A DNA stretch of 64,000 nt. Source: Macrostomum lignano. Lineage: Eukaryota. The position numbers and the translations under genes were made by a program. Positions 5,731 through 64,000 of this stretch are shown in pieces. A model generated the notes under the pieces. That model had not been told where the DNA came from and did no database searches. It saw nothing but the letters and a program-made list of their open reading frames with translations. The first letter of the stretch is position 1, and the number at the start of each line of letters is the position of its first letter. The DNA lies in assembly GCA_002269645.1 (NCBI GenBank), contig NIVC01002272.1:1-64000 (forward strand), read 5' to 3'.

Positions 5731-5752
5731 GCCTTCCGAATCTTATCCCAAA

Positions 5753-13624: not shown

Positions 13625-13750
13625 TCTGGCAGCAGGTTTTGCTAACCTGGCTGTTTTTAGCGACAGCTTTAATTTTGCACCTGCATGTGCAACAAACTGG
13701 TCTAATTACTGCCATCTTCCACCTGCAAGTCGCATTAAATTTAGCAGTGG

Positions 13751-21322: not shown

Positions 21323-21817
21323 GCATAACATTGTGATTGTTCTTGTTAACACAATTAAAACACCCGAGCGCCAGCACAGTATGAATAATTGAACGAGTCA
21401 AAAAAATTATAAATTTTTAAGGGATTCACTGATGCAGTACTGAAGAGCGCATTAAACAATGCTGAAAATATCAAAAAGTTGAAGTTTCGCTACGATTATA
21501 GTTCGATATAAGCGCAAATAAAATTTACAATTTTTGTTGCCTGCCTAGCCACTTTAAAAATACGCGCTCATTTAGCTTCTTAGAAATTACCAGTTAAAAA
21601 AATTAGAAACGCATCCTTTTCACGATAAAAAACAAGTAGTAGTACTAATACGTTTGGCTCATGCAAAAAGCTTGTTTAGTCAATATGACTCAGTGTATTT
21701 TATAACTATTAGAAAATGTAGGGTACTTTTAAATAATGAATACTTAGAGTTGTAAAAATATGACATTTGAAAGCGCGCTTGGATTTTTAAAACGGTATTA
21801 TCGAATCGAACGAGCAC

Positions 21818-29294: not shown

Positions 29295-31061
29295 TTGGCG
29301 ATGACCACAGTGCTCCCCCAAGGTGCGGTGGGCTCCCCGGTCCTCTTCCTTCTGTATGTGAACGACTGGGCCGACAGGGAGGTGGAAGGAGTCCACTATG
29401 GCGGGTTCGCCGATGACCTGGCCATTTGGACCAGCGGCGACTCGCTAGAGGAAGTCACTGACCGCCTCCAACGCGCCCTCGACAAGATCAGCGATTGGGC
29501 GAGCGACCTCAAAATCGAACTCAACCCGAACAAATGCGAGTCCTGCGTCTACAGCCGCTCCCCCCGTGACGGGACGGCCAAACCGCACCTCAGCATCAAC
29601 GGTAAAAACATCGAGTGCAAAGACTCTCTGAAGTACCTTGGAGTTCACATCGATCGAGGGCTCACCTTCGCTGTGCACACTGAAAACGTCGTCCTCAAAA
29701 TGAAAAAAGAAGCAGGATCATCCGGGCGGTGGCCAACACGGACTGGGGCTGGCACCAGGAGGACCTCAAGAAAATCCATACTGCCATCGTCGAGAGCTGC
29801 GTCTGGCACGCTGCGGCTGCCTGGATCCCCTGGGTCTCCAGAAGCAACATCGACAAAATCGAGCGCGCCCAACGTGAAAGCCTCAGACTGGTAGCCGGTC
29901 TCGTTAAGTCGACCCCTTCTGAAGCTGTCTACCTCGAGACCGGCGTCGCCCCCATCTCAGAGATAGCGATCTCCAAGTGTGTCCGGGATTGGGAAAAAGC
30001 TATACGTGAACCCAGACCGAGCCCAAAAAGAGACCTATGCGACATGTCGATCACCAGGAGACTCAAATGGAGGTAACAAGCCAGAATCGGAAGCCAGCAT
30101 ATCAGCAGGGCGCCGCGAGAGGAATTCGTTAGCAGAAGACACCCGCCATGGAGACGAGACGCCTCAAGCACGACGGCGTCTTCTGCTGCCCAGGCCTCCT
30201 AAGGGTGACCCCCTCATCAAAGAAGAGGCCGTTGAACATCCGCAGCATCGGATCAGTGGACCTTACTATCTACTCGGACGGCTCGGTGGACGGACTTGGA
30301 AAGAATGGAGGCGCGGCCTGTGTGGCCTGGATCAACGGTGCGGAGAAGCCAAAGATTGCAGCTGCGGGCGAATATAGTAGCTCCTTGGCAGCAGAGAGAA
30401 GAGCCCTCCATCTAGCCCTTGACCTGATCGAGGAGGAATCTCCGGAAAGCGCCCTCATCCTGACCGACAGCAAATCCGCCGTCCTGGCCGTCGCCAAGGA
30501 GAAGCTCTCCAGGAATCGATCCCATTTCCTCCTGATCGAGAGACTGAGGAGACTTAGTTCCCAATGCAAGATCCACCTCCAATGGATTCCAGGCCACGTC
30601 GACATCGCGGGAAATGAGCGCGCCGACGCCCTGGCCCAGCAGGGGACTCTTCTGGATCAGAGCACGATCCCGATCGAATTTGATGTGCTCGATAGACAAG
30701 TCAGAAACCGTTGGAAGCCGGTCACGAAAGACCATCGTCTGACGGAGATCTACGGCACCACCCGAGACCCCGGCAACTTCGGCAGGAAGAACTCAGTGTT
30801 GCTCGCCCAGCTTCGATCCGGACACTGTAAATGGACACCCTACTGGCGCCAGAAGATTGGGCTAGAGGAGCCTCAACCATGCCCAGACTGCGGTGAAAAT
30901 CCCGACAAGGACCACTGGTTCCTCTGCCCCAGATGGGACTGCCTACGGCTAGAGCTCGGACTCACTGGAAGGAAAGACTACGGAAGGGAAATGATGATGT
31001 TTGAGTTCCTGAGGAAGACCCACCCGGAATGGCTGGCCTGATCTCGGAGACTCGTTCCGAT

Positions 31062-33002: not shown

Positions 33003-34816
33003 ATGGGCCAGAAAGAATTGCCAAAAATGGACAGTCAACTCACCGCGGCAGCACCTGCCCAGAGACAAGCAGGCGAGCAGATGCGATTAACAGACCTGCC
33101 AGTCAGCATCTCAGAAGAGCTGCACCGGTTTTCCATGCTTTCGTCGATTCGTGGCCTGTCCCGAATTTTAAAAAGTCGATCTCTGGCCTGGAAAATCTTC
33201 TGGTTCGTTTTCATTGTTGCCAGCCTGATGATTGCGATACTGCTATCGGCGAACGTTGTTCAAAGCTACATTAGTTACGACACTATTCAGGAGCTGAGGG
33301 AGCATCTGAACTACCATTTGCCGTTTCCTTCAGTCACCATCTGCAATTCCCAGGCAGTCGACAAGGATCGCTACGAAAGCCTCAATGCCAGTTTAGTGAC
33401 AAAACTCTTCGGCTATTTGGCAAACCTGCGGAAGCACTATGGCTCAAGCGAGAGTCTGCTAGAGGATCGGTACTTCCTGTTCGAGAACATGGGACGCAGT
33501 CACGCCTACAGGCTGGGCTTTGCTCTCGACACCCTAATTCTGCCCAACTCGTGCATATTCACATTCTTGAACACCAGCACCAGTAAGGACTCTTCCGGTC
33601 ATGCAGAAGCAACGATATACGCCTGATTCAAACGCCAAGGTACTTCAACTGCTACAATGTGACACCAGGGCCAGACATCATCAACCACACCACCGATCTA
33701 AAAATGGATATTTACTTGAACGTCCCGGGCCTATTTGACAATTACAATATCAGCCACCTACCCTACAACGAGGACGACACCACGGGTGCAAGAGTCTGCG
33801 TGCACACCCCACTCTCCTGGCCCTACACGGAAGAGATCGGCATCGATATTGAGCCAGGCACAAAGACAATGATTGATGTTTCGCCAACAAAGCTGAAACT
33901 CCTTCCCAACTATGGCGGACAGGTGTGCACAGAGCACAACCTTCTTGAGGAGGTGATGGAGGCTTACACTGACATGGGCAGTACAAAATTTGCTTACACA
34001 AGCAAGTTTTGTAAGGATCTTCACCTACAGAATCTGACTGTTGATAGGTGCAACTGCATCGACCCCCGAAAACCGTATCCGCCCAGCTTGCATAAATACC
34101 AATTCTGCGGCAAGATGAACGGCAGCGATGATAAATCGTTGAATGAAACTCTGCATCAGTTGCGCTGCGCTGACAATATTGAGCTCGACAACAGCTACTC
34201 AGCCAGTCAGCACGACTGCGCATTGAGCTGCGAAACGTGCCAGTACCTCTACCAGACATCCCAGTCACTGTGGCCAACAAAAAACAAGGAGGTAGAGTAC
34301 TACCAACAGATGCTGAAGCCCTTGCCAAAGCTCAGAGAGAAGTACAAGGCGTACGATCACATTCAGAACTTGTCCCGCGTGAACGCCATCAAGAGCCGCA
34401 AGCTGCTGATGAAGGAGGACGATATTCGAAATAATTTTGTTCGGCTGCATATTTTCCGCAGCGACTTCTCGGCTAGCGAGAAGAGCATGGCTCTGAAGAC
34501 CACTAAGGAGAGCATGGTTTCTCAGGTTGGGGGAATTTTCCACTTGCTCACCGGCATCACATTTGCCTGCGTTGTTGAGGTGCTCGAGTGTCTGTACTAT
34601 CTACTCAAGAAGACTCTGCTGCCTCGGTCCAACGGTCCGAACCACGGAGTGCTGCTGCAACGGCTTCGACGCCGTCCACACCGGAATGATTCAGCGAACA
34701 ACTGTCAAGGTGTCGATGGTTCCGCCTATGAAATGCAAAAGTTGCAAACTCCGGAGCCAAAAGCTGAGGAGTTCAACCACCATGCGATCGCGGAAGACGG
34801 AGCAGCAAGCGCGTAA
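33003..34816 (+). CDS. Intronless DEG/ENaC (ASIC-like) channel subunit; apparent frameshift near 33590
   Basis: TM1 region WKIFWFVFIVASL, then LPFPSVTICN; FNCYN; GARVCVH; Cys-rich thumb (CKDLHLQNLTVDRCNC...CALSCETC); NFVRLHIF; TM2 SQVGGIFHLLTGITFACVVEVLE. ORFs 33003-33626 and 33659-34816 join if one base is added near 33590. Confidence 0.9.
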
Positions 34817-41863: not shown

Positions 41864-43790
41864 TACTTCTCAGTAGTATATACTGTATGCACTTCCTTCT
41901 ACTTCACTTCACTTAGAAAATGAATCAACATGGAAAAACACTTCTTAAAATATTTCATCAGAACTCTCAAGAGATTTCTCAACTAACCATTAAGGTTGAA
42001 GGCTGATTCGAAGCTTGAATAAGAAAGCATGCTTCTTCTTACCACAAATTCGTGTCTATTTATACTACAATTTCAGTTCATTTAAAACAAAAAATAAATT
42101 GCAAAAATTTATTTTGAGAAATACAATTATTAAAACAAAATATTTTTTAGAAACATACAGATTTTAAAATGGCAAAGAAAGTTTGTTTTTTGCATACAAG
42201 TAAAGAATAAAACTACCTTCCATATATGCCTTTAGGCTTTATGGCTGGGCCTATGTTTTTTAAGTGCAACAATACTAAACTTTTGGACATCTTAAACTTT
42301 AGGTAGCTAAAATAGTTGCAGTTTTGACAAGATCATAATTTTGTCTCTATAGGGGTTTTTGGCGGTGCTAGCCTAATTTCAAATTTGAGCTTCATGAATC
42401 ATTTTTTGTAGCCTAAAGCCAACTATCAGGGCATGGGGAATAGGGGGTTTTAGGATGGGAAAAATTTTCATGGGGAATAATTTTATATACCTAAACTTCA
42501 ATAGAGGCATTAAGGTCTATTGATAGGTAGATAAATTTGGAGACTGAGAGAAAGAGGCAACTCTTAGGGGATAGGGGGGTGTTAACAACCATAAACAAAA
42601 ATGACAAATTGCTCAACATTTGTTAGAACTTAACCCTTTCATATATGCGCAACCCCCTGATTTACACTAGGCCTCCCCTAGCCATGCAAGTTACTTTTTA
42701 ACCAAAAATGCAACTTACCTGTGAAAGAAACCTTAAAGCAAAAATAATGCAATCTTGGGTAAATGGCAAGAGTAATGACTAACTATCTTATAAAGGCTAA
42801 AGGCCTTATTATCTAATTAAGACATACTATGTCCATATTCTTTAAGGTGGGCATTTTTGTGACTTACCCCTAGTCTATTACAATTAATAATGGCCAAATT
42901 GGCTAGGTTGGCCAGCAGTTGCATATTTATGCTTTCATAATTACCTTACTGAGCATAACAAAATCATTTAGAAAATTTAAATTAACCTATATTTTTATTT
43001 TTTGTCCCCCTATTTTTTTAATAAAAGTATAAAAAATTATCTAATCTTGTTTCAATTTTTAAAAAGAAATTTTGGATTTCTTGGTAAAAAATATGAAGAT
43101 CTTATCTCAAATTTTTCTTGTCAAGATCTTGTGATTTATGAAATCTATGCAAATTAGAATAATTAAACTGAATTTAATCAATTTAAAGTTTTTTTCAATA
43201 AAAAAATATAGAAAACATTTGACATTTTAGGACTTACTATAAGTCCAGGGTATTTTCTAATGAACATATCAATTGATTGTTTATTAGCATCTAGTAAATC
43301 TTATAGAATATAAAGTTTTTTTAAATAAATAGATCAATAGATGCTTCTACCTGGGAGAAGTTAATTGAAATAAGGAATTACCAGTGGCAAAGGCAAAAGT
43401 GGGGCATTTGGCTATAATTGGTTGGTAGGATGGCAGGTTAGGGTAGGTTAGCCTTTATAAACGGGCTATTAGCCTATGCCTGAGAGTATTGAACTGATGG
43501 CACCCTAAAGTATATTATGTCTTAAGAGAGATGATATATTTACTCTTTAGAATGACAATAAATATACATCTTTTTAAATATATTATTAATTAAGAATTAA
43601 AACTTTATGTAGTATATATTTTGCTTTGTTTTGAAAATATACCTCTCACATACCTCTTGCACATATTAGGCTTTCATTTATATACCAAAGATATCTGAGG
43701 TTTATCATAGTCAATTTAATGACTTATGCCCAAATTTATATTATGTATGTCTGCTTTTTGAATGATTTTTTTTCAGCCACTGTGAAGAGC

Positions 43791-44648
43791 ATGTATGGTC
43801 AGGGCCATTCAAATTATCCACATTCATATGGTATGCCAAGCCAAGCACCTAGCTACCCTATGGCTCATCCATCTCAGTCTCAACAGCCACCACCATATGG
43901 CTTATATGCACCGCCTTTGCCAAGTTTTGCTGCTGGCAATATGCCTGACCAGATGCCAATGCCTTTGTGTCAGCCAGGACAGCCACCTTACCAGCCAGGC
44001 CAGCCACCTTACCAGCCAGGCCAGGCACCCTACCAGCCAGGCCAGCCACCTTACCAGCCAGGCCAGCCACCTTACCAGCCAGGCCAGCCACCTTACCAGC
44101 CAGGCCAGCCACCCTACCAGCCAGGCCAACCACCTTACCAGCCAGGCCAGCCACCCTACCAGCCAGGCCAGCCACCTTACCAGCCAGGACAGCCACCTCA
44201 CCAGCCACCCTACCAGCCAGGACAGCCACCTCACCAGTCAGGCCAGCCACCTTACCAGTCGGGCCAACCACCTCACCAGCCAGGCCAACCGCCTTGTCAG
44301 TCAGTGTCACAGCCCTACCAGCCAGGACTGCAATCTTATTCACCGGGTTCCCAGCCTTACCAGCCAGCATCCCAGCCATACCAGCCGGGACAATCGTCGC
44401 AGTCACCATATCAACAAAGCCAGTTCTCAGCCAGTAGTCACGATAAAAGGCTCGCGGATCATGCACAGCCAGCGGCATCGAAAGCCTCGTCTGTTGAACC
44501 TTCCGCGCCGCCGCCGCCTCCTTCGCCGCCGCTGCCAACGCCGCAGTCTGCCGCCCAGCCAGCTTCTACAGGCTCGGGCAACAATACAGGCAAAGAGGCC
44601 GCTTTAGACGCCTTGGCCCAGATGATGCAAGGCGATGTCAATCTTTGA
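43791..44648 (+). CDS. Gln/Pro/Tyr/Gly-rich low-complexity protein with (QPPYQPG)n
   Basis: Acceptor TTTTTTCAG at 43776 and ATG at 43791; GC-rich island in AT-rich DNA; in-frame 21-bp repeat at about 43981-44290; non-repetitive flanks also open (MYGQGHSNYPHSYGM..., ...AALDALAQMMQGDVNL*). May be incomplete. Confidence 0.55.
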   Translation: MYGQGHSNYPHSYGMPSQAPSYPMAHPSQSQQPPPYGLYAPPLPSFAAGNMPDQMPMPLCQPGQPPYQPGQPPYQPGQAPYQPGQPPYQPGQPPYQPGQPPYQPGQPPYQPGQPPYQPGQPPYQPGQPPYQPGQPPHQPPYQPGQPPHQSGQPPYQSGQPPHQPGQPPCQSVSQPYQPGLQSYSPGSQPYQPASQPYQPGQSSQSPYQQSQFSASSHDKRLADHAQPAASKASSVEPSAPPPPPSPPLPTPQSAAQPASTGSGNNTGKEAALDALAQMMQGDVNL

Positions 44649-51430: not shown

Positions 51431-52105
51431 AATCGCTTTATTCGATTGATAGTAAATTCCAGAAAACCAGTTTTTAATACTTGTCACCGCCCTATAAAAT
51501 CTCTCGATAATTCCCAGTTAGCATGCTATTGCTGCATGCAAGCACTTGAGCCACTGGAATTTTTATTCCTTTTGCAGAAACTTGCAGAAATCTCAACTTT
51601 CCATTGTGTATTGCCTGATTAACTTTACTACGAGCTAGAACTTCGTCACCCACTTACTCTGCACTTTGTTGCTTATGCTTATCTTGTATCGTATTTTCTC
51701 GTTTTGCTTTTGCTCTAAGCTGAGCTTATACAATACATGCCTTGTGGCAGTCATGCTTTTTTGCTTTTCCATTTTCATATTTTTACCGTCCAGTTGTACG
51801 CACAGCGTGAATATTTATCTTTGTTATTTGCCCTGTTTGCTGTCTTGTTTAATTTTGTTACTATAACAGAAACGTTATCACTTGCCCTGTGTGATGATTT
51901 GCAACTCGCTTGACTTTCTAGTTTTTTCATGTGCGTCATCAAAAATTTGCTGTTCCTGAAAGCCAACATTGCATGCTGGGCATAGATGTTTAGCCTTATT
52001 CATTACCTTTTGCTTGTATTTATTTAGGTAGTAAATAAAAGAGTTTGTTTCGATTTCTATTTGATGTGAATGCATTAGACTAGCGCACAAGTATTTTTTT
52101 CATTT

Positions 52106-52201
52106 GGATCCTTTAGTAACCAGATTAGCTAGTTGAAGCTAGAAGTTCAGTTAGGATCCTTTAGTAACCAGATTAGCTAGTTGAAGCTAGAAGTTCAGTT
52201 A
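52106..52201 (+). repeat. Perfect 48-bp tandem duplication
   Basis: GGATCCTTTAGTAACC...GAAGTTCAGTTA occurs twice. Confidence 0.9.
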
Positions 52202-52908
52202 GTTTAGAAATCTACGAAGAAGTTAAACTAAGACATAATTTATAGCTACCTACCATTTGAAGCAGCCGTCAAATTGACTCTTCTCTTCTACTCGTCCATG
52301 TTGACAACCCGTTATTGTAGCCAAATATACCCGGTAGATAATAAATAAAAACCATCTGGAAGCTTTCAGATCCTCAAAATACTCTCTGAGTATTATTTTA
52401 GGTATTACTCCTATTAGTATGTCTTTCATTAGGTAAAATTTATTTGTGTCCTACTAATTTTTAAATCAAGGACCACTAGAAGTACATCAATCAGGACGCT
52501 GCAGTCAAAGATGGTATAATTTTTGGAGGCTGATTTCCGTAAAAAAATGCACTGCGGAGATTAGAAAAAATCAACTCTATTTTATATAGTTGTGCAGTGA
52601 AAGTTTTGTTTTTACATTTTTTATAAGCCCGAAGTTGTTAATACTCACAAGTTGAATTACGAGCGTAGTTACATAAAATACACCAGAGCAACATGCTGTT
52701 CATGCTAAATTAAAAGAATGCTAATCTTCACTAATCCAGATCAAATGCAATCATTGATTTTGTAATGAGCCTTCAAAAGAATTACACGATCTTTGACTGT
52801 AGCGTCCTGATTTACTGCTAGTGGTCCTTGATTCAAATCAGAACTTTACCGAAAGCGAACCCATCCAACCTGCTCTCTTTACAGAAGACTTGCATTTTTT
52901 TGAGAAAC

Positions 52909-54177
52909 ATGGACGGTCAAAGCAGCAATGCGACTTCCGCCGGTACAGGACAACTCGAAGCGGCGTCAACTTTGAGTGAACGTCAGCGAGACCAGATCCA
53001 GCATATTAGTCGGTATAGAGATGTGCTTCTTCTAAGACTTGAATCCATGCAGATAAACCAGGCTGGCCAGCCGCTCAGTCTTCGGCATTTAAGCAACGTA
53101 GTTGACTGGCCAGAGTATTACGTTCGAGTCCAGACTGGCTCTAGTAAAGTAGACGAGTTGATTGCAGATTTAGATACGTTTTTCGGCGCCAGTCTGGCTC
53201 AGCTGAATCAGGTGCGCGATGAGGCCAGACAGAAGCTGGCAAGATTTTTTCCGAGCTCAGTGGAAGCGGAGCAGCTTGAGTTGCGCATGTTCCAGCGTCT
53301 AAGATCTTGTCAGGAGGCCAACGAGTCGAATTTCGAAGAAATCTATCAATTTGCAATGGTCGCTCTGTGCTCATTTCTGCACTGGCTGCAGCCGTCGCCT
53401 TGGGAGCGTCGGCAGCAACTTAGCAAACGAATGCACTGGCTTCACGAGCAGTACCAGGACACCATCAAGCAGCGCATTGACGCAGAGTATCGAAGTAATC
53501 CTTTCTACGCTCAGACGCTTCAGAGGTTGTGCCTTGTGTTGAAAGCGCCGGATTCTTTCTTGGAGAAGCGCTCATACTCCGAGGGCATTGTCGGACCGGT
53601 TGATCGTCTGGAAGCGTTTCTGCAAAACTTCTCCAATCAGACGGCTGAGCAGCGCCTTAAAGACCAGCTGATCTGTCGGATGCGGATTTTCCATCGGCAG
53701 CACGGAGATTACATCAGAAAGCGCATGGAAACTAGCAGTATTAGCCCGGTCGTCTTGGACAAGCTTCGTAAAATGCTCGCCGACTTTGAATCACCCGAGT
53801 CATTTTTCCTGCATTATAAAGACGATTTGGAAGCCATGCAAAAATTGCTGGATCGATCCGAGTCCACTCTTGAAGCCGTATTGCCGGACAAATTGCATCC
53901 GAGCTTGCGCAAAGTCCGCACAGAGGCTCGCGCGAAATTGGCGCAATTGTATCGGAGTCCCGCACTTGGTGACTACTATGTAGACCTGCTGCTGAAGCTG
54001 TACCCGAAACCAGAGAAGCTGGAGACTCACCTGTACAACCGGTGTCGAAGGGTTACATCGGACAGTGCCGAGCTGGTTTTATACGAGCGATACATAAAGA
54101 ATCTGCTGATTGTGCTCAACGGTCGCTGGCATGAGAGCCTGTTAAGACCGTTTCTAATCGAAGAACGCGAGCTTTAG
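52909..54177 (+). CDS. Intronless MED15-derived mosaic protein (two KIX-like and about three middle-domain-like modules)
   Basis: ATG 52909 in a 449-codon ORF. VRDEARQKLA and VRTEARAKLAQLYRSPALG...PEKLETHLYNRC resemble the KIX of the 62440 gene. LSERQRDQIQH, RMHWLHEQYQDTIKQRI...LQRLCLVLKAPDSF and RMRIFHRQHGDYIRKRME...LDKLRKMLADFESPESF resemble its middle module. Ends FLIEEREL*. Confidence 0.7.
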   Translation: MDGQSSNATSAGTGQLEAASTLSERQRDQIQHISRYRDVLLLRLESMQINQAGQPLSLRHLSNVVDWPEYYVRVQTGSSKVDELIADLDTFFGASLAQLNQVRDEARQKLARFFPSSVEAEQLELRMFQRLRSCQEANESNFEEIYQFAMVALCSFLHWLQPSPWERRQQLSKRMHWLHEQYQDTIKQRIDAEYRSNPFYAQTLQRLCLVLKAPDSFLEKRSYSEGIVGPVDRLEAFLQNFSNQTAEQRLKDQLICRMRIFHRQHGDYIRKRMETSSISPVVLDKLRKMLADFESPESFFLHYKDDLEAMQKLLDRSESTLEAVLPDKLHPSLRKVRTEARAKLAQLYRSPALGDYYVDLLLKLYPKPEKLETHLYNRCRRVTSDSAELVLYERYIKNLLIVLNGRWHESLLRPFLIEEREL

Positions 54178-54321
54178 TATCGTAGCTACGCTCGTAGTTT
54201 GCGCGACTTTTTGGTGATTGGGTTTCTTAGGCCTAATGGAGAGATGTGCAACAGCTCAGGCGTAGGTTTAGTGCGACGCATCTGAAGGCTGTTTACGGCT
54301 GTTCAGTCAAAGGACCGGGAT

Positions 54322-54494
54322 AGGGGGTCGCCGCACACACCCTCAATTACCTCAGCTAATGCTGCTGGCACCCATTTTACAGCTGGTTGAACAATGCAGA
54401 GTTAAGTGTCATGCTTGTTTCAAGTCGGTCAAGAATCGAACCCCCGACTTTTTAGTCGTGAGTCCGACGTTCTAACCACTAGGCTACAACCCCC
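54322..54494 (-). mobile_element. SINE family A copy
   Basis: Same reverse-complement motifs; a degenerate paralogous copy lies at about 60660-60760. Confidence 0.7.
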
Positions 54495-55230
54495 AATTGA
54501 TAATATATATATAATACCTGAACACTATTCGAATACATGTATATTGAAATCTACTGATCTTGTAGGTCATTGTTATAAAATAAGATTTTATCTTGATTCT
54601 GGGATTTTGATCGTTTTGCACGCCGATAGCTGAACACGTCTGCGAAGTGTTATTTGTGCTCACCACAAAACGTACTCGTTGTCGAAGTCTGCTAAAACTG
54701 GCAATTGAAGTTACGCAAAGAACCCAGCTTCTAATCTGCGGGGTCTATCAGTGTGCATTTCTACTGTAGGTGTAAAACTCTGTTGCCTTTGATTGCTTTT
54801 ATTGCATTCATTTATCTCCTTTATTCGAAACTAAGTACGAAATTTTGACTGGCGCTCAGACTTTATTAATCAGTAAAGCAAAGTTTTTTCAGTTTCCGCA
54901 TTTCAACACTGCCGCTCAAGTTTAACGCTTGTATGCAATTTTGTAGTTTTCAGAAAATACAAAAATGACTAAACTTGTTTGCTCTTATCTTTGATAATTT
55001 TTCTTGTTTTTCTTTAAATTGATTTCAAACCAACATACTAGGATAGAAAAATGGAAGTGCTAGACTGCTCTACATTTCTTAAATAGAAAGATACAGTCAG
55101 TTGATAAAATTATTATTTTAAAACTTCGGAAGCGAACTATACTAACGACGTTTTTAGCTATATGAAAAGACTAAAAAATTGTCATGTAATCCTGGGTCCA
55201 AACCTAGGAATATATAGATCGTATATTCAC

Positions 55231-56171
55231 TACATGGGCCACTATATTTACTACTTGGGCGCGTCAATAGAGTCCTAGGGGTGTTTGGGGTTAGGTCGGG
55301 GTTCGGGGTCCCGATGAATGTTCAGGATGGGGTTCGGGGTTCCCGATAAATGTTCGGGATCGGGGTTCGGGACGGGATTTTGGACCGGGATTTCGGGGTT
55401 TTCGGGGTTCGCAAATTTTCTGAATTCCCATAGAACTACGAAAAAATCCTTATGAATTAGCTTTTTTCGTTTTTAACGTGATCGCTTAAGGCTTATGACG
55501 CTTAAATCCAAAGCTTTATTTAATGCTTTTCTGTGGTCGTAAGTTTCGTTAATAACATTTATAAATACGCGCTCTTTCAAATACTATATTGCAAAACTCG
55601 TACGATCGTACTTAAATAACTTTTGCATAAATATTGCCTTCTACACTGAAATATATTGGCCAAACAGGCTTCTTGCCTGAGCCAAACTTACTACTACTAC
55701 TGTGCACGTGCATATTCTAATACATACTTTACATGACGGACTTAGCTTTTGACACGTGCCGTGCCGTCCATAAACTGCGATGATTATCAAGTCAAAAATA
55801 TTTTTTAAACTTATGGTATAGGATTAGTACTATTACTACTATTATTTTTCTATAATTAAGTTTATATGTTTTTAAGGTATTGTTTCTTAGAAAAAGATTT
55901 AGAATCTTAAGAATTTTAAGAATCATAGAAATGTTTAAATTTATAGACCTATTCTTCAATAGAGAGTCATATCTCTATTAAAAAACAGGTTTATAAAATA
56001 AAATCCCCCAATAATGTCCCCAGGTCCTAGATAGATGATCCGATGAGGTTATCGGGGTCGGGATTAGGGTTCAGGACGGGGTTCGGATTCCCAAAAGATG
56101 TTCGGGATCGGGGTTAACCTGGAACCCCGAAAAAAACGCCGTCCCGAAGACCCGTACAATAGACCCATGTA
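55231..56171. mobile_element. Possible non-autonomous DNA element with GGGGTTCGGG subterminal arrays
   Basis: Ends TACATGGG...CCCATGTA; two G-rich arrays of (GGGGTTCGGG)-like units near both ends. The TIR is very short. Confidence 0.35.
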
Positions 56172-56744
56172 TTTCTTGAAAATTTTAGCGACCACCGTCT
56201 ACTTAGATATAGTTTAAGTTCAGTAGTTTGAGCGATAAGTGCGTACATTATTGTGCTATAATTTTCCGATCCACATGTACTCAGCAACATTGAAAATTCG
56301 CCACTCTATGCAACACCAGTGAGCAATTTCTCTTGGACTGTTGTGAAATAAAAGATACGAGAAAACTAATCGGGGTAGCTTTAATCCGTCCGACAAGTTG
56401 CGTCACTAGCAAAGAATTGAGAGACTTTACCTGCACTCTCAAAAGTTTTCGATTTTTCGTTATTCTTTTACGCCTAAAAACCATTAAAATGGCACGACTC
56501 AGCTCATTGGTTTTATGATTATATTTTATCATATTAGCTGACTGTGTAACAGAGATGATAAAATAGATTCAAAAAACCAAAGGTTCAAGCTGTGCCATGC
56601 ATTTTTAATGACTTTTAGATACAGGAAATGCACGTAAAATCGAAAAACTATTTAGAATCCTAATTTTCTGAGAGAAAGCTTTATAAATATCAATAGAGCT
56701 ATAACAAAGGCACAACATATCAAAATATAAACATTGGGTCTGCC

Positions 56745-58783
56745 CACAGATACTATAAACACTAGATAGGCCACTCCAGCTAATTTTCACAACACGACAG
56801 TTTACTCTACTTTCTGCTTAGTAGTAGTAAAAACATTTTAGCGTTATTTATATTTTTTTAAAATAAAAAAAACAGATGAATGCAATGCAGCAATTGTATT
56901 GATTTTTTGCAAAAAGAAACTTATAATTATACTTTCCACAATTCAAAGCAACATTGTGAATGCTTTAGATTGCATAGAAGGCTATATTATTGCAGTCTAC
57001 TATTGTATATTTAGCAAATACGAGCTATATCATATACTCCATAATCCATATTCGTGTAGCAAAATAGAAAGATTTCTCATCTTAATCAGCTCATCTGTTT
57101 GTGAAACTCGCAGCGTGCTGTCGAAGAACAGGGTCGCCAGTCGCCCTTGTTCAGAGGCAGCATTCAGAACGGCCCAACAGATGAAAAAAACTGGCGAATG
57201 CGCCACTTCAAGGTCCAGGGATGTATCCGATGGAGAGCCAATCCTCAGTGGTTTCGTAACAGGCAGCCGATAAGCAGCAGGACCTTTGTGGTGCAGCTGC
57301 AATGAGCTGCTGATGAGATGACATCCTTTGACCAGAGCACCCCTGACTGCGAGCGCCCTGCCGCCCAGTCGACCGCTGGAAGCTGCGCTAGCCACGCCTC
57401 CACAGTCCATGGATGCACGACTGCGCTGCACTTGCCTTGACCATCGAGAGTGGCCGCTGCAGCCGCTTGATTTGCCTGTCGCTTTCGGGATTGCCGCTGC
57501 AGCCGCTTGATTTGCCTGTCGCTTTCGGGATTGCCGCTGCAGCCGCTTGATTCGCCTGTCGCTTTCGGGATTGCCGCTGCAGCCGCTTGATTCGCCTGTC
57601 ACTTTCGGGATTGCCGCTGCAGCCGCTTGATTCGCCTGTCACTTTCGGGATTGCCGCTTGATTCGCCTGTCACTTTCGGGATCGTTGCTGCAGCCGCTTG
57701 ATCTTTGCCTCTAGCGCTTGGAACCCGCGAATCGGCTGCAGAGGTGAGAGCTTTCAGCCGCAACAGCTGTTCTCGGCGCAGAATCTGGTAGCCGAAGGTT
57801 GCTCTGCCACAGCACTGGCAGCAGGCAAGTCGCAGGCTCGGCTGCAGATAGATTGCTAATTGGCCCCAGCACTGGAGGGTACATGTCGTCTGCCTCTTCA
57901 TCGTTTATCAGTCCTTTGCACAGAGGGTAGCTGGTCTATTTGAACGAGCCGAGGCAGCATCAACTCTTGGTGTGGGATTGCGTCCCAGCGAAAACAGATG
58001 TCTTGCACATCCGTGGCACTTTGTAAGGCAGCAGTAGGCCTCGTCCATAAAGTGCAAGCTGAACACACGGAGGCCCCGTGATTTAATTGTTTATAAAGAT
58101 CAATATCCACGCTCCTGCAGTAGCTGCTGCCAGCGCTTCGCCAGTGTCATCTTTTGGTAATTTATGCATTCGCAACGGATTTTTCTTTCTCGGATGTTAA
58201 TAGCACTAGTACAAAGCTCGTGCAAGTGGGAGCACAGCAGTGGTTCGAATCAAAACATTTCTCGAGTACAAGATTAGATAGAAAAGCTAGTATGCACTCG
58301 AACTTTCTTTAACTCTGACTCTTGTCCTGTTCATCTATATAAGCTTGTATTTAAGCACGATTCGCCACCCCCAAATTTTCTAACCCACAACCTCTCAACC
58401 CCCACCCCACCCCTAACCCAGGCTAGCTATGTGCAGTCCTTTATTTTCTATCCCACCACCAGTAGGCCTAAATTATCGATCCACTCACCCTGCCTTATAC
58501 GAAACTGATATTAACCCTATTCCAGACTACCCCCCTTCCTTCACTTTGAAAGATAGCGGCATTGCACACTGTCTGTCGCGTCTTAATGTACACCAGTACT
58601 GCACAAAACAAGTTAGTTGTTTATGGCGTTAGCAAAACGATGTCTTAAAAACAGTCACTCGATTTGTCTAATTTAGCAAATAATACTGTTGCTTCCTTTC
58701 ATTGCTACTAAGCAGAAAGTAGAATAAAAAACTTGCCCAGAAAATTAGCCTGAGTGGCCTATCTAGTGTTTATAGTATCTGTG
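56745..58783 (-). mobile_element. P-superfamily-like non-autonomous DNA transposon with decayed THAP domain
   Basis: 32-bp perfect TIR CACAGATACTATAAACACTAGATAGGCCACTC with CA...TG termini. 8-bp TSD GGTCTGCC at 56737-56744 and 58784-58791. Minus strand 58245-58049 yields HCCAPTC, HKLPKD, KRWQQ and RVFSLHF across broken frames. Confidence 0.8.
57455..57705 (+). repeat. 40-bp tandem repeat inside the P-like element
   Basis: GCCGCTGCAGCCGCTTGATTTGCCTGTCGCTTTCGGGATT, about 6 copies. Confidence 0.9.
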
Positions 58784-59425
58784 GGTCTGCCTCCTATCGA
58801 AAGCAAAAAAAAATTTGTGTTCAAAAATAAAGACTTCCTTTTTTCGTAGGGTATTTTTCGGTGAACAGTGGCCTTCAAAACGTTTTTAATAGATTTCGAG
58901 TGTTGCGTCCTTCTACTTTAGTATGGTCTACTTAACATGGTTGTTGCAGTCTCACGCAGAAACTGCGCGAGTTCAAACCCAATTGCGTCATTCCAAAGAA
59001 GCCTCTATGTTCCTTTCGCTCCTCGACACTCAAAATATAGATTTTTTGGACTAAACTTGTACACACGAAGCCTTGAATGCCCTAGATATGTGCAAGTTTA
59101 GTCTATAAAAATCTATGAGAATTATTTTGAGTTTCGCTTCCTGATGAGCTAAAGGCTTCCTTAGCTTGCTTTTCAAGTTTTCGTTAATATAAGTCCAATT
59201 TTCGTAACTTTTTTGTCAAACCCTGCTTGCTAGTGTCATTGTGAGCAGAATGACACATCATTTGTGTACATAGGTTACTCGGGCTCCACTTTATGAGCTC
59301 AAGTTGACAGGCCCTTTGGTTAAAGTAGTTCAGAAGCTGGATCCATTTATGCTAATTCATATCGAAAGTTATCAAATTAAGTTTAAAAACCATCTTTCAG
59401 CGCTACCGCGGCTTCAGAGAGTAAA

Positions 59426-60505
59426 ATGGATAACCAAAACCGTGCCCTACGATACGTCATTGTGCCGCCACCGCAGCAGCTGCGTGCTGAGACTCGATGC
59501 AAGCTGGCTAATCTGTACCGCAGCCCTGCACCTGGAAACCAGGTAGCTCAGCTGCTGGACCGCTATCCCACCGCTGAACAACTTGAAGATTCCATTTTCA
59601 GGCATTGTCAGGCTCAGCAGCGGAGTGGTGGCGTCAGCTTTGATCAGCACCAGTACCTGAGCCTTGTGTCCAAGGTGGAAGACGCGCTGACGGGTCGCCT
59701 GTCGCATCAGCGACAGCAGCTGCGTGCTGAGACACGACGCAAATTGGCTAATCTGTACCGCAGCCCCGCACAGGGACACCATGTAACCGAGCTGCTGAAC
59801 CGCTGTCCCACCGCTGAACAGCTAGAAGATTGCCTTTTCAGGTATTGTCATTCTCGCCAACAAAATGGTGGTGTCAGCTTTGATAAGCAGAAGTACCTGC
59901 ACGCTGTGTCCACTATGGAAGGCGTACTGACCGGTCGCCTGCCGCTTAAGCCACAACAGCTGCAGCAGATGCGTGTTGAGACTCGGCGCAAATTTGCTAA
60001 TCTGTACCGCAGCCCTGCACCTGGAAATCTGGTAGCCGATCTGCTGAGACAATATCCTACTGTTGAGCAGCTGGAGGATTTGGCTTTCAGGCGTAGTCAG
60101 GTGCAACAGCAGAGAAGTCGCGCCAGCTTTGATCAGCAGTACCTGAGCATTGTGTCCAAGCTGGAAGACTTACTGACAGGTCGCCTGCCGCCGGCGCAAG
60201 AGCAAAAGCTGGAGCAGATGCTGCAGCAACAGCAGCAGCGGGAGCAGCAGCTGCGTGTTGAGACTCGACGCAAGCTGGCTAATCTGTACCGCAGCCCTAC
60301 ACCTGGAAACCTGGTAGCCCAGCTGCTGAGCCGCTATCCCACCGCTGAACAACTTGAAGATTTCGTTTTCAGGCGTAGTCAGGCGCACCAGCGGAGTGGT
60401 GGCGCCAGCTTTGACCAGCAGTACCTGAGCCTTGTGTCCAACCTGGAAGGCATACTGACGGGTCGCATGCTAAGCCTGCTTCCATTCGATGAACGCGAGA
60501 TTTAA
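59426..60505 (+). CDS. Intronless protein of four tandem MED15-type KIX domains
   Basis: Uninterrupted 359-aa ORF with four roughly 80-aa copies of LRxETRRKLANLYRSPAPG...PTAEQLEDxxFRxxQ...FDQQYLSxVSKxEDxLTGRL; ends LLPFDEREI*. Confidence 0.8.
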   Translation: MDNQNRALRYVIVPPPQQLRAETRCKLANLYRSPAPGNQVAQLLDRYPTAEQLEDSIFRHCQAQQRSGGVSFDQHQYLSLVSKVEDALTGRLSHQRQQLRAETRRKLANLYRSPAQGHHVTELLNRCPTAEQLEDCLFRYCHSRQQNGGVSFDKQKYLHAVSTMEGVLTGRLPLKPQQLQQMRVETRRKFANLYRSPAPGNLVADLLRQYPTVEQLEDLAFRRSQVQQQRSRASFDQQYLSIVSKLEDLLTGRLPPAQEQKLEQMLQQQQQREQQLRVETRRKLANLYRSPTPGNLVAQLLSRYPTAEQLEDFVFRRSQAHQRSGGASFDQQYLSLVSNLEGILTGRMLSLLPFDEREI

Positions 60506-62439
60506 TATCGCATCTAGTTCGTGCCACATGTAACTAATTGTTTGTCCGATATATAAGCATTATTTAGTGTAATAATAAGTAATAATTTACTACAACTGGC
60601 CTAATAGGAAAACCCACTATGGCGTATCGGAAAGCTGCGTACGGCTGTTCGGTCAAAAGACTGGAGTTGCCACACGTTCCAAGTAGGTCGAGAAACGAAC
60701 CCCCCCCCCTTTTAGTCGTGCTCCGATGCTCTAACCACTGGTTTTAATAGAACCCCCAATTTGTTATATATGAAGGACCTGAATATTATTCGAATGCATA
60801 TTTGAATCTAGTGATCTCGTAGGTCATTGTTTTAAAATATGATTTTAGTCGTATTGCACGCTAGTTGCTAAACGCGTCTGCCCAAAGTGTTATGTATGCT
60901 GACCAAAAAATGTACTCGTTGCCGTATTTATCCCTGCCTGCCGAAGCCTGCTGAAACAGGCAATTGAAATTGCGCAAAGAACCCAAAGTAGCTACTATCT
61001 AAAACAGTAGCAACTTGCGCCCATATGCGGTCTATCAATGTGCATTTTTACTAATGGTGTAAAACCCGTTAAGAACGTTACCATGGCAAGAATCGCTAAA
61101 GAGTCATTGTAAACAACTCTCTAGTGAGTCTAGCGACTCTGGTGCAACTATTATGACTTTTTAACGACTCATGCGACGGAGAGGCGACTGTTGCGTCACA
61201 AGCGCGTCACGTGAGTTGCAGAATCGTGAAACAGTCGTTCTATTGTATTCATTTATCTGCTTTTATTAAGTACGAAACTGGCTGGCGCTCCGAATTTTTA
61301 AATCAGTGACGCAAAACTGTCGCAGTCGGTAGTTTTTTTCAGTTTGCGCATTTCAACAATTAACTACTGCTCAAGTTTAACAACTTTTGTATGCAATTTT
61401 GCCGTTTTATCCAGAAAGTAGATACGAAAAGGACTGAATTTGTTTGTTCCATCTTTGGTAATTTTATTGGTCTTTTCTTAATTTATTTCAAACCAACAGG
61501 AAAACACTACGAGACTGACTTGAAGCCAAAAGCTACGTTATAATTCTCGACTCTTATTTTCGTTACCTCTTATACTTTTACGTTGACCATACACAATATT
61601 TCTATGGCTAACTGTGCCAGAATCATTTGAAGCGTGCATTCTTCACTTTGGTTGGTAAAGTTGACTTTTAGCGACACAAATGGACACCTAATGCCAAACG
61701 AGCGTAAATCAAGAACAGCTGGCAACAGACCTCGGCAATCACACTAAGAGAGCCAACCAGCTAGGGTTCCTCACTGCCGCAAAATCTATAGGCAGTAGCA
61801 CAAACACGTGCTGGACTATTGACACCCCTGTACTGACTCACTGGGGCGGAGCGGGGGTAGTGTGGAAAGGCGCGGTTGGAGGATTTCAGCTGCGGGGTAA
61901 GAGCCAACAAATGAGCCTTGGTTTTAAAAATGCAATAAAATGCTTCTGTTTAACTTACTACTGAACTGAAAGTAGCTTACACGCAAATGTGCTGAGTGGC
62001 TCATCTAGTTATTCTAGTATCTGGGTTTTTTGTCAGTTGAATGCACGCTTTATTTGATTCTGGCACAATTATTGCCGGATGGTTAATGTTTTGTCTATGG
62101 GCTTGCCAATGTCCAACAAGCATCATAGCTGAGACGCTGACATTCCAGCGTTACTCCACAGCCCACAGATGGTTGCGAGTAGGCAAGAGCTGTCAGCCTT
62201 GCTACATTAAGCAAACGTATCTCGGATTAAATTCAAGGCGCTTAAGCACAAATAGGCTGCAAAAAGCTATATTAAATACTTAATTATTTATAGGGTATAA
62301 AATACTTTTGTAAACCTAATTTGTAGTGTTCCGTAAACTCAATCTCATTTCATATAAATTCATACCGTAAGCTGTAAAATAAAGTTTTGAAAAATGAAAT
62401 CACCATCGTTATCTTTCAGAGCTACCGGCTTCAGAAAAA

Positions 62440-63666
62440 ATGGAGCCGAACCAAAACTATGGCCAACGATACCCCATCATGCAGCAACAACAGCTGCAGC
62501 AGCTGCGTGTTGAGACTCGACGCAAGCTGGCTAATCTGTACCGCAGCCCTGCACCTGGAAACCAGGTAGCCCAGCTGCTAAACCGTTATCCCACCGCTGA
62601 TCAACTGGAGGATCACGTTTTCAGGCGTTGTCAGGCTCACCAGCAAGGTGGTGGCGTCAGCTTTGACCAGCAGTACCTGAGCATTGTGTCCAAGCTGGAG
62701 GACGCACTGACAGGTCGCCTGCCGCAGCCGCAACAGCCGCAGCAGATGATGCAGCAGCAGCAGCCGCCGCCTACTCAAGTGATGCAACAGCAATTGCAGC
62801 AGCAGCAGCAGCAGATGATGCAACAGCAGCCTCCGCCGCAACCTCAGCCTCAGGTGATTCGGCCTCAAATGCCGACAGATCCGCTGGTGTCGCTTTCAAA
62901 CATGGTCGGCGGCGGCCCGGTTGGCGTCAGCAACATCGTTGTCGGTGGTGCCCGGATGGGGCAGCAGAGTGTGCCGTTGCAGCCTCGCATGGGGACCAGG
63001 CCTGTTCCGCAGCAGCAGCAGCAGCCGCCTCCCAACCAGCTTCCACCATTGAATGAGCGTCAGCAGGTTCAAGTGCAGCGCATGCGGCAGCTCCACCAGC
63101 AGCACAGCGAGACGGTCAGAGCCCGGATGGAAAATTCGCACGGCAATGCGGCCAATTTTGAGAAGCTGCGCCAGATTTGCAACATTCTCGAGACGCCAGA
63201 AAATTTTGTACGCAACCAGCGGGATCCGGATAAAATTGACAACACAATCAGGCAGTTGGAGAGCATTCTGCGGCCCAATGCGCCTCACGCTCAGGCACTG
63301 CAGCAGCAGCAGCAGCAGCAGCACATGCTACAACAACAGAGACTTCAGCAGCAGCAGCAGCAGCAAATGCAACAGCAGCAACTGCAGCACCAGCAGCTAC
63401 AGCAGCAGCAACAACTCCAGCAACAGCAGCAGCAGCAACTGCAACAACAGCAATTGCAGCAGCAGCAATTGCAACAACTGCAGCAGCAACAGCAATTTCA
63501 GCAGCAGAAATTGCAACAGCAGCAGATGATGTCGCAGATGCAGCAACAACAACAGCAGCAGCAGCAATCGCCAATGCCCATGTCCAGTGCAGCTCCTGAC
63601 AGCGTCGCTGCTTCGTCGCATGACATTCCTCCGGCGCCTCGTCGACTTGGTGAAACACTTCTTAAA
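62440..63666 (+). CDS. MED15: Mediator subunit 15-like (KIX, polyQ, middle helical domain, polyQ); probably continues beyond the window
   Basis: TRRKLA...ADQLEDHVFRR...QQYLSIVSKL aligns by eye with the recalled MED15 KIX (FRQKLV...SKDMESHVFLK...DEYLSLVARL). TDPLVSLSNMVGG resembles SDPMNALQSLTGG. FEKLRQICNILETP resembles LSKMKSLLDILTDP. Long polyQ tracts; plausible donor AAA/GTACGT at 63667. Confidence 0.72.
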
Positions 63667-64000
63667 GTACGTTAAAGTACGCCAACCAATCACCTCTTAG
63701 TTGACTCTATAAATTCGCTGTCAAGGTTCACCTTTAATACAAAAGAGTTCGGCCTCCAATACCTTTTTTTAGAGCAAAACATCATCAACTTGGTGTTTTT
63801 AAAGCCGTTCCCTATCTGTCCGTTGCCCAACGATTCAAAATCACTAACAAGTTTTCTCCAGCCAACGATTGAAAGAAGCAACCAGAATCCATGGAACATT
63901 CTGTCACGATAGATTGCATCCGCCGTCAGTTGCGTCCCCACCGGAGTGGAGAGGGGGGCATGTCCCCCGGCCCCAGTAAAAGCTGTGGGGGGGGGGACAT

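What the first reader, a model, noticed from the sequence alone, without database searches (positions are those of the whole stretch)
59426..60505. A protein made only of four tandem KIX domains, nearly identical at DNA level to the MED15 KIX
Seen: the 359-aa ORF is four KIX-like repeats joined by short Q-rich linkers. Repeat 4 (from about 60245) shares 54 consecutive identical nucleotides with the MED15 KIX (from about 62496), implying recent duplication or gene conversion. The frame is intact through all four copies, whereas several other host genes here carry frameshifts. Inference: a multivalent KIX array would bind activation domains with high avidity and could act as a dominant-negative titrator or a multi-activator scaffold.
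Basis: partly seen in the sequence, partly recalled or inferred. Interest (0 to 1): 0.75.

Follow-up and report, generated by a model that had tools for sequence, protein, structure and literature searches.

The report
Four-copy MED15-derived domain gene in flatworm

Summary
ORF 59426-60505 (359 aa) consists of four ~80-aa units. They are 73-89% identical in DNA to each other and to the N-terminal domain of the downstream gene, and a 55-nt identical run exists (60244 vs 62496).

The window is Macrostomum lignano contig NIVC01002272.1. Two sister contigs of this neopolyploid also carry four units, so the copy number is not a one-contig artefact. Both sister copies have frame-breaking indels: 1 nt in one, 22 nt in the other.

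"Nearly identical" is overstated, and a conversion-tract test is not significant.

KIX/MED15 identity is only weakly supported. There is no Pfam, PDB-sequence or Foldseek match. A profile of 17 canonical MED15 KIX domains does match the neighbour's unit in a directed test (E=7.8e-5 at Z=1; 0 of 1000 shuffles; hhalign P=0.002). The neighbour is colinear with Med15_M and Med15_C at weak significance.

The gene is chimeric. Its 5' end resembles MED15-like, and its tail plus 1 kb of 3' flank resemble a third paralogue, ORF449.

Selection kept the frame (P=0.013) and the hydrophobic core (P=2e-4).

Most likely it is a lineage-specific MED15-derived, Mediator-uncoupled domain array, possibly a decoy for activation domains. 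Expression and binding are untested. Interest is moderate to low.

The parts
59426..60505 (+). ORF359: a 359-aa single-exon ORF made of four KIX-like units plus a short tail, ending in TAA.
   Evidence: The same array is on sister contigs L001 and L002. A transcript-based GenBank/nr protein, P0004 (196 aa, units 3-4), is annotated on L002.
59350..59425 (+). 5' leader shared with the MED15-like gene. It contains acceptor-like TTTCAG (59395-59400) and CTTCAG (59412-59417). A role as cis- or SL trans-splice acceptor is inferred only.
   Evidence: Alignment with 62345-62440; blastn.
59474..59713 (+). Unit R1 (80 aa).
   Evidence: It is 88.6% nt identical to M. Against the canonical KIX HMM, 4 of 1000 shuffles reach its score.
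59714..59953 (+). Unit R2 (80 aa), the most diverged unit.
   Evidence: 79.3% nt identical to M. The KIX HMM score is not significant.
59963..60199 (+). Unit R3 (79 aa).
   Evidence: 1 of 1000 shuffles reach its score.
60200..60244 (+). Q-rich 15-aa linker, EQKLEQMLQQQQQRE.
60245..60481 (+). Unit R4 (79 aa). Its first 54 nt, plus the preceding base, are identical to 62496-62550.
   Evidence: 2 of 1000 shuffles reach its score.
60482..60505 (+). C-terminal tail PFDEREI plus the stop codon, homologous to the tail of ORF449 (RPFLIEEREL plus stop).
60506..61498 (+). 3' flank, 70-72% identical to the 3' flank of ORF449 (54178-55035). This marks ORF359 as chimeric.
62440..63666 (+). Exon 1 of the MED15-like gene. 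It holds unit M (62497-62733), polyQ tracts and a Med15_M-like segment (63052-63279). The probable donor is AAA|GTACGT at 63666/63667. The gene continues beyond the window; gene models on the three contigs are 668-672 aa.
   Evidence: Against L002 it has 11 synonymous and 3 nonsynonymous differences.
52909..54177 (+). ORF449 (P0002), the third and older paralogue. It has a KIX-like unit without the inserted helix (53203-53403), two Med15_M-like segments (53404-53631 and 53644-53889), a second KIX-like unit (53905-54144) and the shared tail.

Best explanation
ORF359 is a real, young, lineage-specific gene of Macrostomum lignano. It sits in a head-to-tail cluster of three related genes: ORF449, ORF359 and MED15-like.

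Shown:
- The repeat unit is the N-terminal helical domain of the downstream Q-rich gene.
- The gene is chimeric. About 75-90 nt of 5' leader, the start codon and the unit resemble the MED15-like 5' end. The last codons and about 1 kb of 3' flank resemble ORF449.
- The unit was amplified to four copies with a 240-nt period.
- The protein lacks every other part of the parent gene.
- Since the amplification, the reading frame and the hydrophobic core have been preserved while surface positions diversified.

Probable, but weakly shown: the parent is the MED15 orthologue, and the unit is a diverged MED15-type KIX domain with an extra helix in the alpha1-alpha2 loop and a 9-residue insertion in the alpha2-alpha3 loop.

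Inferred:
- The amplification arose by unequal crossing-over.
- The protein cannot enter Mediator, because it has no central or C-terminal anchoring domain.
- If it is made, it would bind the activation domains that the MED15 domain recognises and hold them away from Mediator.
- It would therefore act as a multivalent competitor or buffer, in the manner of a microProtein, possibly with a different specificity in each unit.
For: Organism and reality of the array:
- The window is 100% identical to NIVC01002272.1 of M. lignano assembly Mlig_3_7.
- Three contigs all carry four units.
- The species is a recent hidden tetraploid and the assembly is known to be redundant (PMC5704211 and PMC10733133).

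Unit relations.

Chimeric structure.

KIX and MED15 evidence:
- Canonical KIX HMM against unit M: 8.8 bits, E=7.8e-5 at Z=1, 0 of 1000 shuffles.
- hhalign P=0.0019, aligning LEDHVF...QQYLSIVSKL with MENHVF...EEYLSLVARL.
- Med15_M-like segment: P=0.012 at equivalent positions.
- Colinear 232-column alignment through Med15_M and Med15_C motifs: P=0.069.
- ORF449's middle segment matches the MED15-like middle region in tblastn at E=3e-6.
- MED15-like exon 1 is strongly constrained: 11 synonymous and 3 nonsynonymous differences between homeologous contigs.

Fold: the AlphaFold model of the unit has pLDDT 78. Helices lie where KIX alpha1, alpha2 and alpha3 would align, with one extra helix between alpha1 and alpha2.

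Selection on ORF359:
- P(no stop codon in four units under neutral substitution) = 0.013.
- Inter-unit indels are 3, 9 and 45 nt.
- Only 1 non-hydrophobic residue occurs at 23 core positions x 4 units, against 9.45 expected (P=2e-4).
- Against contig L002 there are 0 nonsynonymous and 2 synonymous differences (0.19%), while non-coding DNA across the aligned 52-64 kb region differs by 2.1%.
Against: - No curated family model recognises the unit or the neighbour.
- There is no PDB sequence hit.
- Foldseek against PDB gives no KIX; the best E is 1.8.
- The positive tests are directed single-hypothesis tests of low bit score.
- Pairwise dN/dS between units is high, 0.52-1.12.
- Two of three assembled copies have a broken frame.
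- The 359-aa protein itself is not in the 15-billion-protein collection. The only nr entry is the 196-aa product of the broken copy.
- No relative outside this locus turned up among 1.84 billion representatives. That search also missed the MED15-like protein itself, which scores E=4e-37 locally, so absence is weak evidence.
- No expression, localisation or binding data were available.
Confidence: 0.5

Rival explanations
1. It is a decaying or never-functional duplicate. ORF359 is a by-product of local segmental duplication and unequal crossing-over in a neopolyploid genome, is still open in one copy only because it is young, and has no role.
For: - Frame-breaking 22-nt deletion with GTGC microhomology in contig L002, and a 1-nt deletion in L001.
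- Inter-unit dN/dS of 0.52-1.12.
- The paralogue ORF449 is relaxed: 7 synonymous and 9 nonsynonymous differences.
- No relatives elsewhere.
- The full 359-aa protein is absent from nr.
Against: - The absence of stop codons after about 110 substitutions is unlikely under neutrality (P=0.013).
- The hydrophobic pattern is retained (P=2e-4).
- All inter-unit indels are in frame.
- There are 0 nonsynonymous differences among the three contigs, although flanks differ by 1-2%.
- The L001 deletion lies in a CCC run on a contig that differs from the window by 4 gaps and 1 mismatch over 3.5 kb. This is typical of residual long-read error.
- Redundancy after genome duplication allows the loss of one homeolog without loss of function.
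Confidence: 0.25
2. It is not KIX and the neighbour is not MED15. The unit is a Macrostomum-specific four-helix domain of a Q-rich protein family, and the resemblance to MED15 is convergent or due to chance.
For: - No Pfam hits.
- No Foldseek KIX hit. The model has four helices and its top matches are four-helix coiled-coil domains with TM 0.42-0.47.
- The collection records only a faint precomputed hit to a four-helix-bundle family, PF26249.
- The C-terminal similarity alone is not significant (P 0.07-0.12).
Against: - Three independent segments match the three MED15 domains in the right order.
- The strongest match is at the KIX alpha2-alpha3 motif (E=7.8e-5 at Z=1).
- The architecture is that of MED15: N-terminal helical domain, polyQ, middle segment, polyQ, C-terminal domain.
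- Foldseek is insensitive for small all-helical domains (general knowledge).
Confidence: 0.2
3. It is a positive scaffold rather than a decoy. The four domains bind several activators or activation domains at once and promote cooperative assembly or condensates at enhancers, or they chaperone activators.
For: - The array is multivalent.
- Surface positions differ between units. The position of the canonical His in ENHVF is H, S, C, L or F in the five units. This would allow different partners per unit.
Against: The protein has no domain that would connect it to Mediator, chromatin or DNA. There are no data either way.
Confidence: 0.1
4. It is an assembly artefact. The four-copy array would be a mis-assembly of long reads across a shorter repeat.
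For: The assembly is long-read based and is known to be redundant and difficult.
Against: Three separately assembled contigs show the same four units with the same unit-specific substitutions. The units differ by 11-27% in DNA, which is far above read-collapse ambiguity.
Confidence: 0.02

Closest known systems
MED15 / ARC105 / Gal11 N-terminal KIX domain (Pfam PF09606 Med15_N)
   Same: - The unit sits at the N-terminus of a Q-rich protein whose later segments are colinear with Med15_M and Med15_C.
- It shares the alpha2-alpha3 motif: LEDHVF...YLSIVSKL against MENHVF...YLSLVARL.
- Helices are predicted where alpha1, alpha2 and alpha3 align.
   Different: - The unit is below every curated threshold.
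- It has an extra helix of about 9 residues in the alpha1-alpha2 loop and a 9-residue Q/G-rich insertion between alpha2 and alpha3.
- It lacks the conserved Trp before alpha1.
- In ORF359 the domain is present four times and nothing else of MED15 is present.
- The canonical His of ENHVF is replaced in all four units.
Plant standalone-KIX and tandem-KIX proteins catalogued in KIXBASE and by Thakur et al. (PMC5668377, PMC3936767)
   Same: These are proteins predicted to consist of KIX domains only, or of several tandem KIX domains. Up to six are reported in a Brassica oleracea protein.
   Different: They are plant proteins found by HMM screening with recognisable KIX sequences. No animal case and no MED15-adjacent, recently amplified array is described in those papers. 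Function is unknown there too.
MicroProteins and dominant-negative truncated paralogues, such as Id proteins and LITTLE ZIPPER (named from general knowledge)
   Same: In concept they match: a duplicate that keeps only the protein-interaction domain of a larger regulator can titrate that regulator's partners.
   Different: This is an analogy of mechanism only, with no sequence relation. Classical microProteins are single-domain, whereas here the domain is fourfold.
ORF449 (P0002) in the same window
   Same: It belongs to the same gene family. It has two KIX-like units, the same C-terminal tail and the same 3' flank.
   Different: It is older and more diverged (27-36% aa identity to the units). 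It keeps two Med15_M-like segments. Its first unit lacks the inserted helix.

Membership tests
KIX domain, MED15 type (Pfam PF09606 Med15_N; also PF02172 KIX and PF16987 KIX_2) | A match to the curated family model at or near its gathering score. | tested here: not met
   hmmscan at E<=1 or E<=10 returns no KIX or Med15 family for ORF359, single units, the MED15-like N-terminus or ORF449. Canonical MED15 proteins score 84-106 bits on PF09606 in the same tool.
KIX domain, MED15 type | Sequence similarity to canonical MED15 KIX domains beyond chance in a directed comparison. | tested here: met
   An HMM of 17 metazoan MED15 KIX domains scores unit M at 8.8 bits, E=7.8e-5 (Z=1), with 0 of 1000 shuffles reaching it. 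For R1, R3 and R4, 4, 1 and 2 of 1000 shuffles reach the score. R2 and both ORF449 units are not significant. hhalign gives P=0.0019 but a probability of only 14%. The signal is weak and confined to alpha2-alpha3.
KIX domain, MED15 type | A three-helix bundle (alpha1-alpha2-alpha3 with short 3-10 helices) and a conserved hydrophobic core. | tested here: inconclusive
   The AlphaFold2 model of the MED15-like N-terminus has pLDDT 78 and pTM 0.61, with helices at residues 13-35, 41-49, 53-68 and 75-90. That is the three expected helices plus one extra. Foldseek against PDB finds no KIX; the best E is 1.8. Hydrophobic positions are conserved in all units.
KIX domain, MED15 type | Binds transcriptional activation domains. 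| not testable with these tools
   No binding data are available. This needs pull-down or NMR titration.
MED15 (Mediator subunit 15): the neighbouring gene | Med15_M (PF21538) and Med15_C (PF21539) domains detectable by the curated models. | tested here: not met
   No family appears at E<=10 for exon 1, the C-terminal ORF or the joined polyQ-free sequence. A PDB sequence search gives no MED15 chain.
MED15 (Mediator subunit 15): the neighbouring gene | Colinear architecture of KIX, Q-rich region, central domain and C-terminal domain, with similarity to canonical MED15 in each. | tested here: inconclusive
   - Central segment: hhalign P=0.012 at equivalent positions.
- Global colinear alignment: 232 columns, P=0.069, covering the motifs LSKMKxLLDIL, ICQPLLDA, VLQGEIARL, LICKLDDKxLPxVPP...YP and SxTxLLDTW.
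- HMM shuffle tests: p of 0.04-0.08.
- The gene is under strong purifying selection: 11 synonymous and 3 nonsynonymous differences.
This is suggestive, not conclusive.
MED15 (Mediator subunit 15): ORF359 itself | Possession of the Mediator-association (central and C-terminal) parts. | tested here: not met
   ORF359 is units, linkers and a 12-aa tail only. It is therefore not a MED15, only derived from one.
Tandem-KIX or KIX-only proteins (as catalogued in plants) | A protein composed solely of two or more KIX domains. | tested here: inconclusive
   The architecture is met, with four units and nothing else. It depends on the KIX assignment above. The precedent is cited.

The most novel reading that the evidence does not exclude
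ORF359 would be a natural, expressed, multivalent KIX decoy. It would tune Mediator-dependent transcription in a flatworm by sequestering activation domains away from MED15, each of its four diversified units having its own partner preference. That would make it an animal example of a coactivator-derived 'poly-microProtein', born by duplication next to its parent gene.
Probability: 0.15. Interest if true: 0.6.

Novelty: new variant of a known kind. Interest (0 to 1): 0.35.

Why it matters
If the array is expressed and binds activation domains, it would be a naturally evolved squelcher. It would show how duplication of only the docking domain of a coactivator can create a regulator of that coactivator.

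M. lignano has RNAi, in situ hybridisation and transgenesis, so the idea can be tested directly. It would also extend KIX-only and tandem-KIX architectures, so far catalogued in plants, to animals.

If it is not expressed, it is an ordinary by-product of segmental duplication in a neopolyploid genome.

Either way, the locus shows that the MED15 N-terminal domain of this flatworm is too diverged for current family models.

Tried and rejected
- **Pfam scans** of ORF359, single units, the MED15-like N-terminus, exon 1, the C-terminal ORF, a polyQ-free joined sequence and ORF449 gave only sub-threshold noise.
- **PDB sequence searches** with ORF359, the unit profile and the polyQ-free MED15-like sequence gave nothing relevant. 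The ETV6 'YRSP..G..LL' matches are chance.
- **Foldseek against PDB** with the unit model found no KIX.
- **Word-indexed protein search with ORF359** returned only its own product.
- **The same search with the unit alignment** returned nothing, not even the self hit, so it is uninformative.
- **The exhaustive profile search of 1.84 billion representatives** found only ORF359, ORF449 and one chance TLDc-like protein. It also missed the MED15-like protein, which scores E=4e-37 locally. This is probably a clustering effect of polyQ, so 'no relatives' is weak evidence.
- **Gene conversion as the cause of the 55-nt run** was rejected. Permutation of variable sites gives p=0.32 for R4-M, and 0.05 or higher for all pairs.
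- **A transposon as the cause of the shared 3' flank** was rejected. The flank matches only ORF449's flank, apart from one element of about 60 nt.
- **tRNA and Rfam scans** of 52-64 kb were empty.
- **A shuffle test with hhalign** timed out. It was replaced by hmmsearch with shuffles.
- **Literature searches** found no paper on Macrostomum MED15.

Full report
**What the sequence is**

[quoted passage not shown] Positions 52000-64000 are 100% identical to contig NIVC01002272.1 of assembly GCA_002269645.1, known as Mlig_3_7. The accession series NIVC is the M. lignano genome.

The surroundings are ordinary animal genes and repeats. They include PDZ-SH3 and 2-oxoacid dehydrogenase exons, an ASC/ENaC channel, TTC5, reverse-transcriptase and RNase H remnants, and many minisatellites.

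**Check of the observation**

The ORF at 59426-60505 (+) is open for 359 codons. Tandem Repeats Finder reports a 240-nt period. Protein-guided codon alignment gives four units:
- R1 59474-59713
- R2 59714-59953
- R3 59963-60199
- R4 60245-60481

A fifth copy, M (62497-62733), lies at the start of the downstream ORF 62440-63675.

The longest identical run is 55 nt, 60244 against 62496. Overall identity is lower than the finding's title suggests: 79-89% between the units and M, and 73-87% among the units. Pairwise dS is 0.13-0.39 and dN/dS is 0.52-1.12.

A permutation test on variable sites gives no significant conversion tract (R4-M p=0.32). The run falls in the 5' part of the unit, which is conserved in all copies. 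It therefore shows recent common origin, not specifically gene conversion.

**Copy number and intactness**

The same assembly holds two more contigs with this locus, NIVC01001542.1 (L001) and NIVC01001545.1 (L002). All three carry the same four units with the same unit-specific differences. The array is therefore not a mis-assembly of one contig.

M. lignano is a recent hidden tetraploid, and the assembly is known to be redundant (abstracts).

- L001 differs from the window by 1 mismatch and 4 gaps over 3.5 kb. One of the gaps is a single C missing from a CCC run in unit 1. This may be residual long-read error.
- L002 is about 2% diverged. It has a 22-nt deletion flanked by GTGC microhomology right after codon 12. 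Only an internal Met then remains in frame.
- The 196-aa protein P0004 (units 3-4) that sits in NCBI nr comes from this L002 copy. The published annotation of this assembly is transcript-based, so that entry is indirect evidence of transcription.

**A three-gene cluster and a chimeric gene**

ORF449 (52909-54177; P0002) is a third relative. It has a KIX-like unit without the inserted segment, two copies of a middle segment, a second unit, and a tail (...LLRPFLIEEREL) like the tail of ORF359 (...LLPFDEREI). In tblastn, ORF449 matches the MED15-like unit at E=3e-8 and its middle region at E=3e-6.

ORF359 shares about 75-90 nt of leader, the start codon and the N-terminal peptide with the MED15-like gene. 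It shares its last codons and about 1 kb of 3' flank, at 70-72% identity, with ORF449. That flank is not a dispersed repeat.

ORF359 is therefore a chimera of the MED15-like 5' end and an ORF449-type 3' end, with the unit amplified fourfold. All three genes lie on the + strand.

**Is it KIX, and is the neighbour MED15?**

Curated models and database-scale searches say no:
- Pfam gives no KIX or Med15 family.
- PDB sequence searches give none.
- An AlphaFold2 model of the MED15-like N-terminus (7-sequence alignment, pLDDT 78) shows four helices.
- Foldseek against PDB returns only insignificant four-helix matches.

Directed tests say probably yes. I retrieved canonical MED15 proteins with a human MED15 query. 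The hits carry source names and Pfam Med15_N, Med15_M and Med15_C. From 17 of them I built profiles.

- The KIX profile scores unit M at 8.8 bits, E=7.8e-5 for a single comparison. None of 1000 shuffles reaches this score.
- R1, R3 and R4 give p of 0.001-0.004. R2 and the ORF449 units are not significant.
- hhalign gives P=0.0019.
- The aligned part is helix alpha2 to alpha3: LEDHVFRRCQAH-[9 aa]-QQYLSIVSKL against MENHVFQKAKT-KEEYLSLVARL.
- The middle segment matches Med15_M at the equivalent position (P=0.012).
- A colinear 232-column alignment runs through the known Med15_M and Med15_C motifs (P=0.069).
- The C-terminal part alone is not significant.

My own Fisher combination of the three domain P values (7.8e-5, 0.012, 0.12) gives roughly 2e-5. 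The tests were chosen after inspection, so this figure is generous.

The neighbour is under strong purifying selection, with 11 synonymous and 3 nonsynonymous differences between contigs.

My reading is as follows. The neighbour is probably the MED15 orthologue (about 0.8). The unit is probably a diverged MED15-type KIX with an added helix in the alpha1-alpha2 loop (about 0.7). Membership by the usual criteria is not met.

**Is ORF359 maintained by selection?**

For maintenance:
- About 110 substitutions separate the four units from their consensus. Placing that many substitutions at random leaves all four units free of stop codons in only 1.3% of trials.
- The indels between units are 3, 9 and 45 nt.
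- At the 23 consensus hydrophobic positions, only one non-hydrophobic residue occurs across the four units, against 9.45 expected (P=2e-4).
- Helix alpha1 is the most conserved part. Change is concentrated on polar positions of alpha2, alpha3 and the loops. The position of the canonical His of ENHVF is H, S, C, L or F in the five copies.
- Between the window and L002, ORF359 has 2 synonymous and 0 nonsynonymous differences (0.19%). Non-coding DNA differs by 2.1%, and the two neighbouring genes by 1.2%.

Against maintenance:
- Inter-unit dN/dS is high.
- Two of three copies have a broken frame.
- The very low divergence, including at silent sites, could also reflect recent homogenisation between homeologs.

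**Mechanism**

Shown: the protein, if made, is four copies of the parent's N-terminal docking-type domain and nothing else.

Inferred from established knowledge of MED15 (abstracts): the KIX domain binds activation domains, and the C-terminal part anchors the subunit in the Mediator tail. Without that anchor ORF359 cannot deliver bound activators to Mediator. The most likely activity is therefore competitive sequestration, made stronger by multivalency and perhaps broadened by unit diversification. A positive scaffold role is possible but has no support. A quarter of my belief stays with 'no function'.

**Comparison and novelty**

Standalone and tandem KIX proteins, with up to six domains, have been catalogued computationally in plants. 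The architecture as such is therefore not new. I found no report for animals or for Macrostomum.

This is a new variant of a known kind: a lineage-specific, MED15-adjacent, recently amplified array. Interest is moderate to low for three reasons: the KIX assignment is weak, expression is unproven, and gene-fragment duplication is common in this neopolyploid genome.

Noticed in passing
window 52909-54177 (+): ORF449 (P0002) is a third MED15-derived paralogue, with two KIX-like units and two Med15_M-like segments. It is evolving in a relaxed way between homeologous contigs (7 synonymous, 9 nonsynonymous differences).
   Followed up: partly
L002 9484-10646 (window about 59462-59483): A 22-nt deletion with GTGC microhomology breaks the ORF359 frame in contig NIVC01001545.1. 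The nr protein P0004 (196 aa) is the internal-Met remnant of this copy.
   Followed up: yes
L001 about 12650-15650 (between window 62297 and 62291): Contig NIVC01001542.1 carries about 3 kb of CT-rich simple repeat between ORF359 and the MED15-like gene. Its translation is rich in Ser and Leu. The repeat is absent from the window contig, so it is an insertion/expansion polymorphism or an assembly difference.
   Followed up: partly
window 57453-57702: A 40-bp minisatellite of about 5-6 copies at 98% identity lies upstream of ORF359. Other large minisatellites lie at 5613-6665, 11878-12597 and 13554-14498.
   Followed up: no
window 21800-27100 (-) and 29295-31041 (+): Two non-LTR retroelement remnants with reverse-transcriptase and RNase H domains, whose frames are interrupted.
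   Followed up: partly
window 33003-34816 (+): Two exons of an amiloride-sensitive sodium channel (ASC/ENaC) gene.
   Followed up: partly
window 43719-44648 (+): A 309-aa ORF made largely of PGQPPYQ heptad-like repeats. It has no Pfam family.
   Followed up: no
window 60676-60740; also 3659-3724 and 11602-11660: A short element of about 60 nt, repeated three times in the window. One copy lies in the 3' flank of ORF359.
   Followed up: no
database behaviour: The MED15-like protein is missing from the 1.84-billion-representative search although it scores E=4e-37 locally. The alignment-based word search missed even the self hit. Q-rich proteins seem to be lost by clustering or filters, so negative results for this family are unreliable.
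   Followed up: partly
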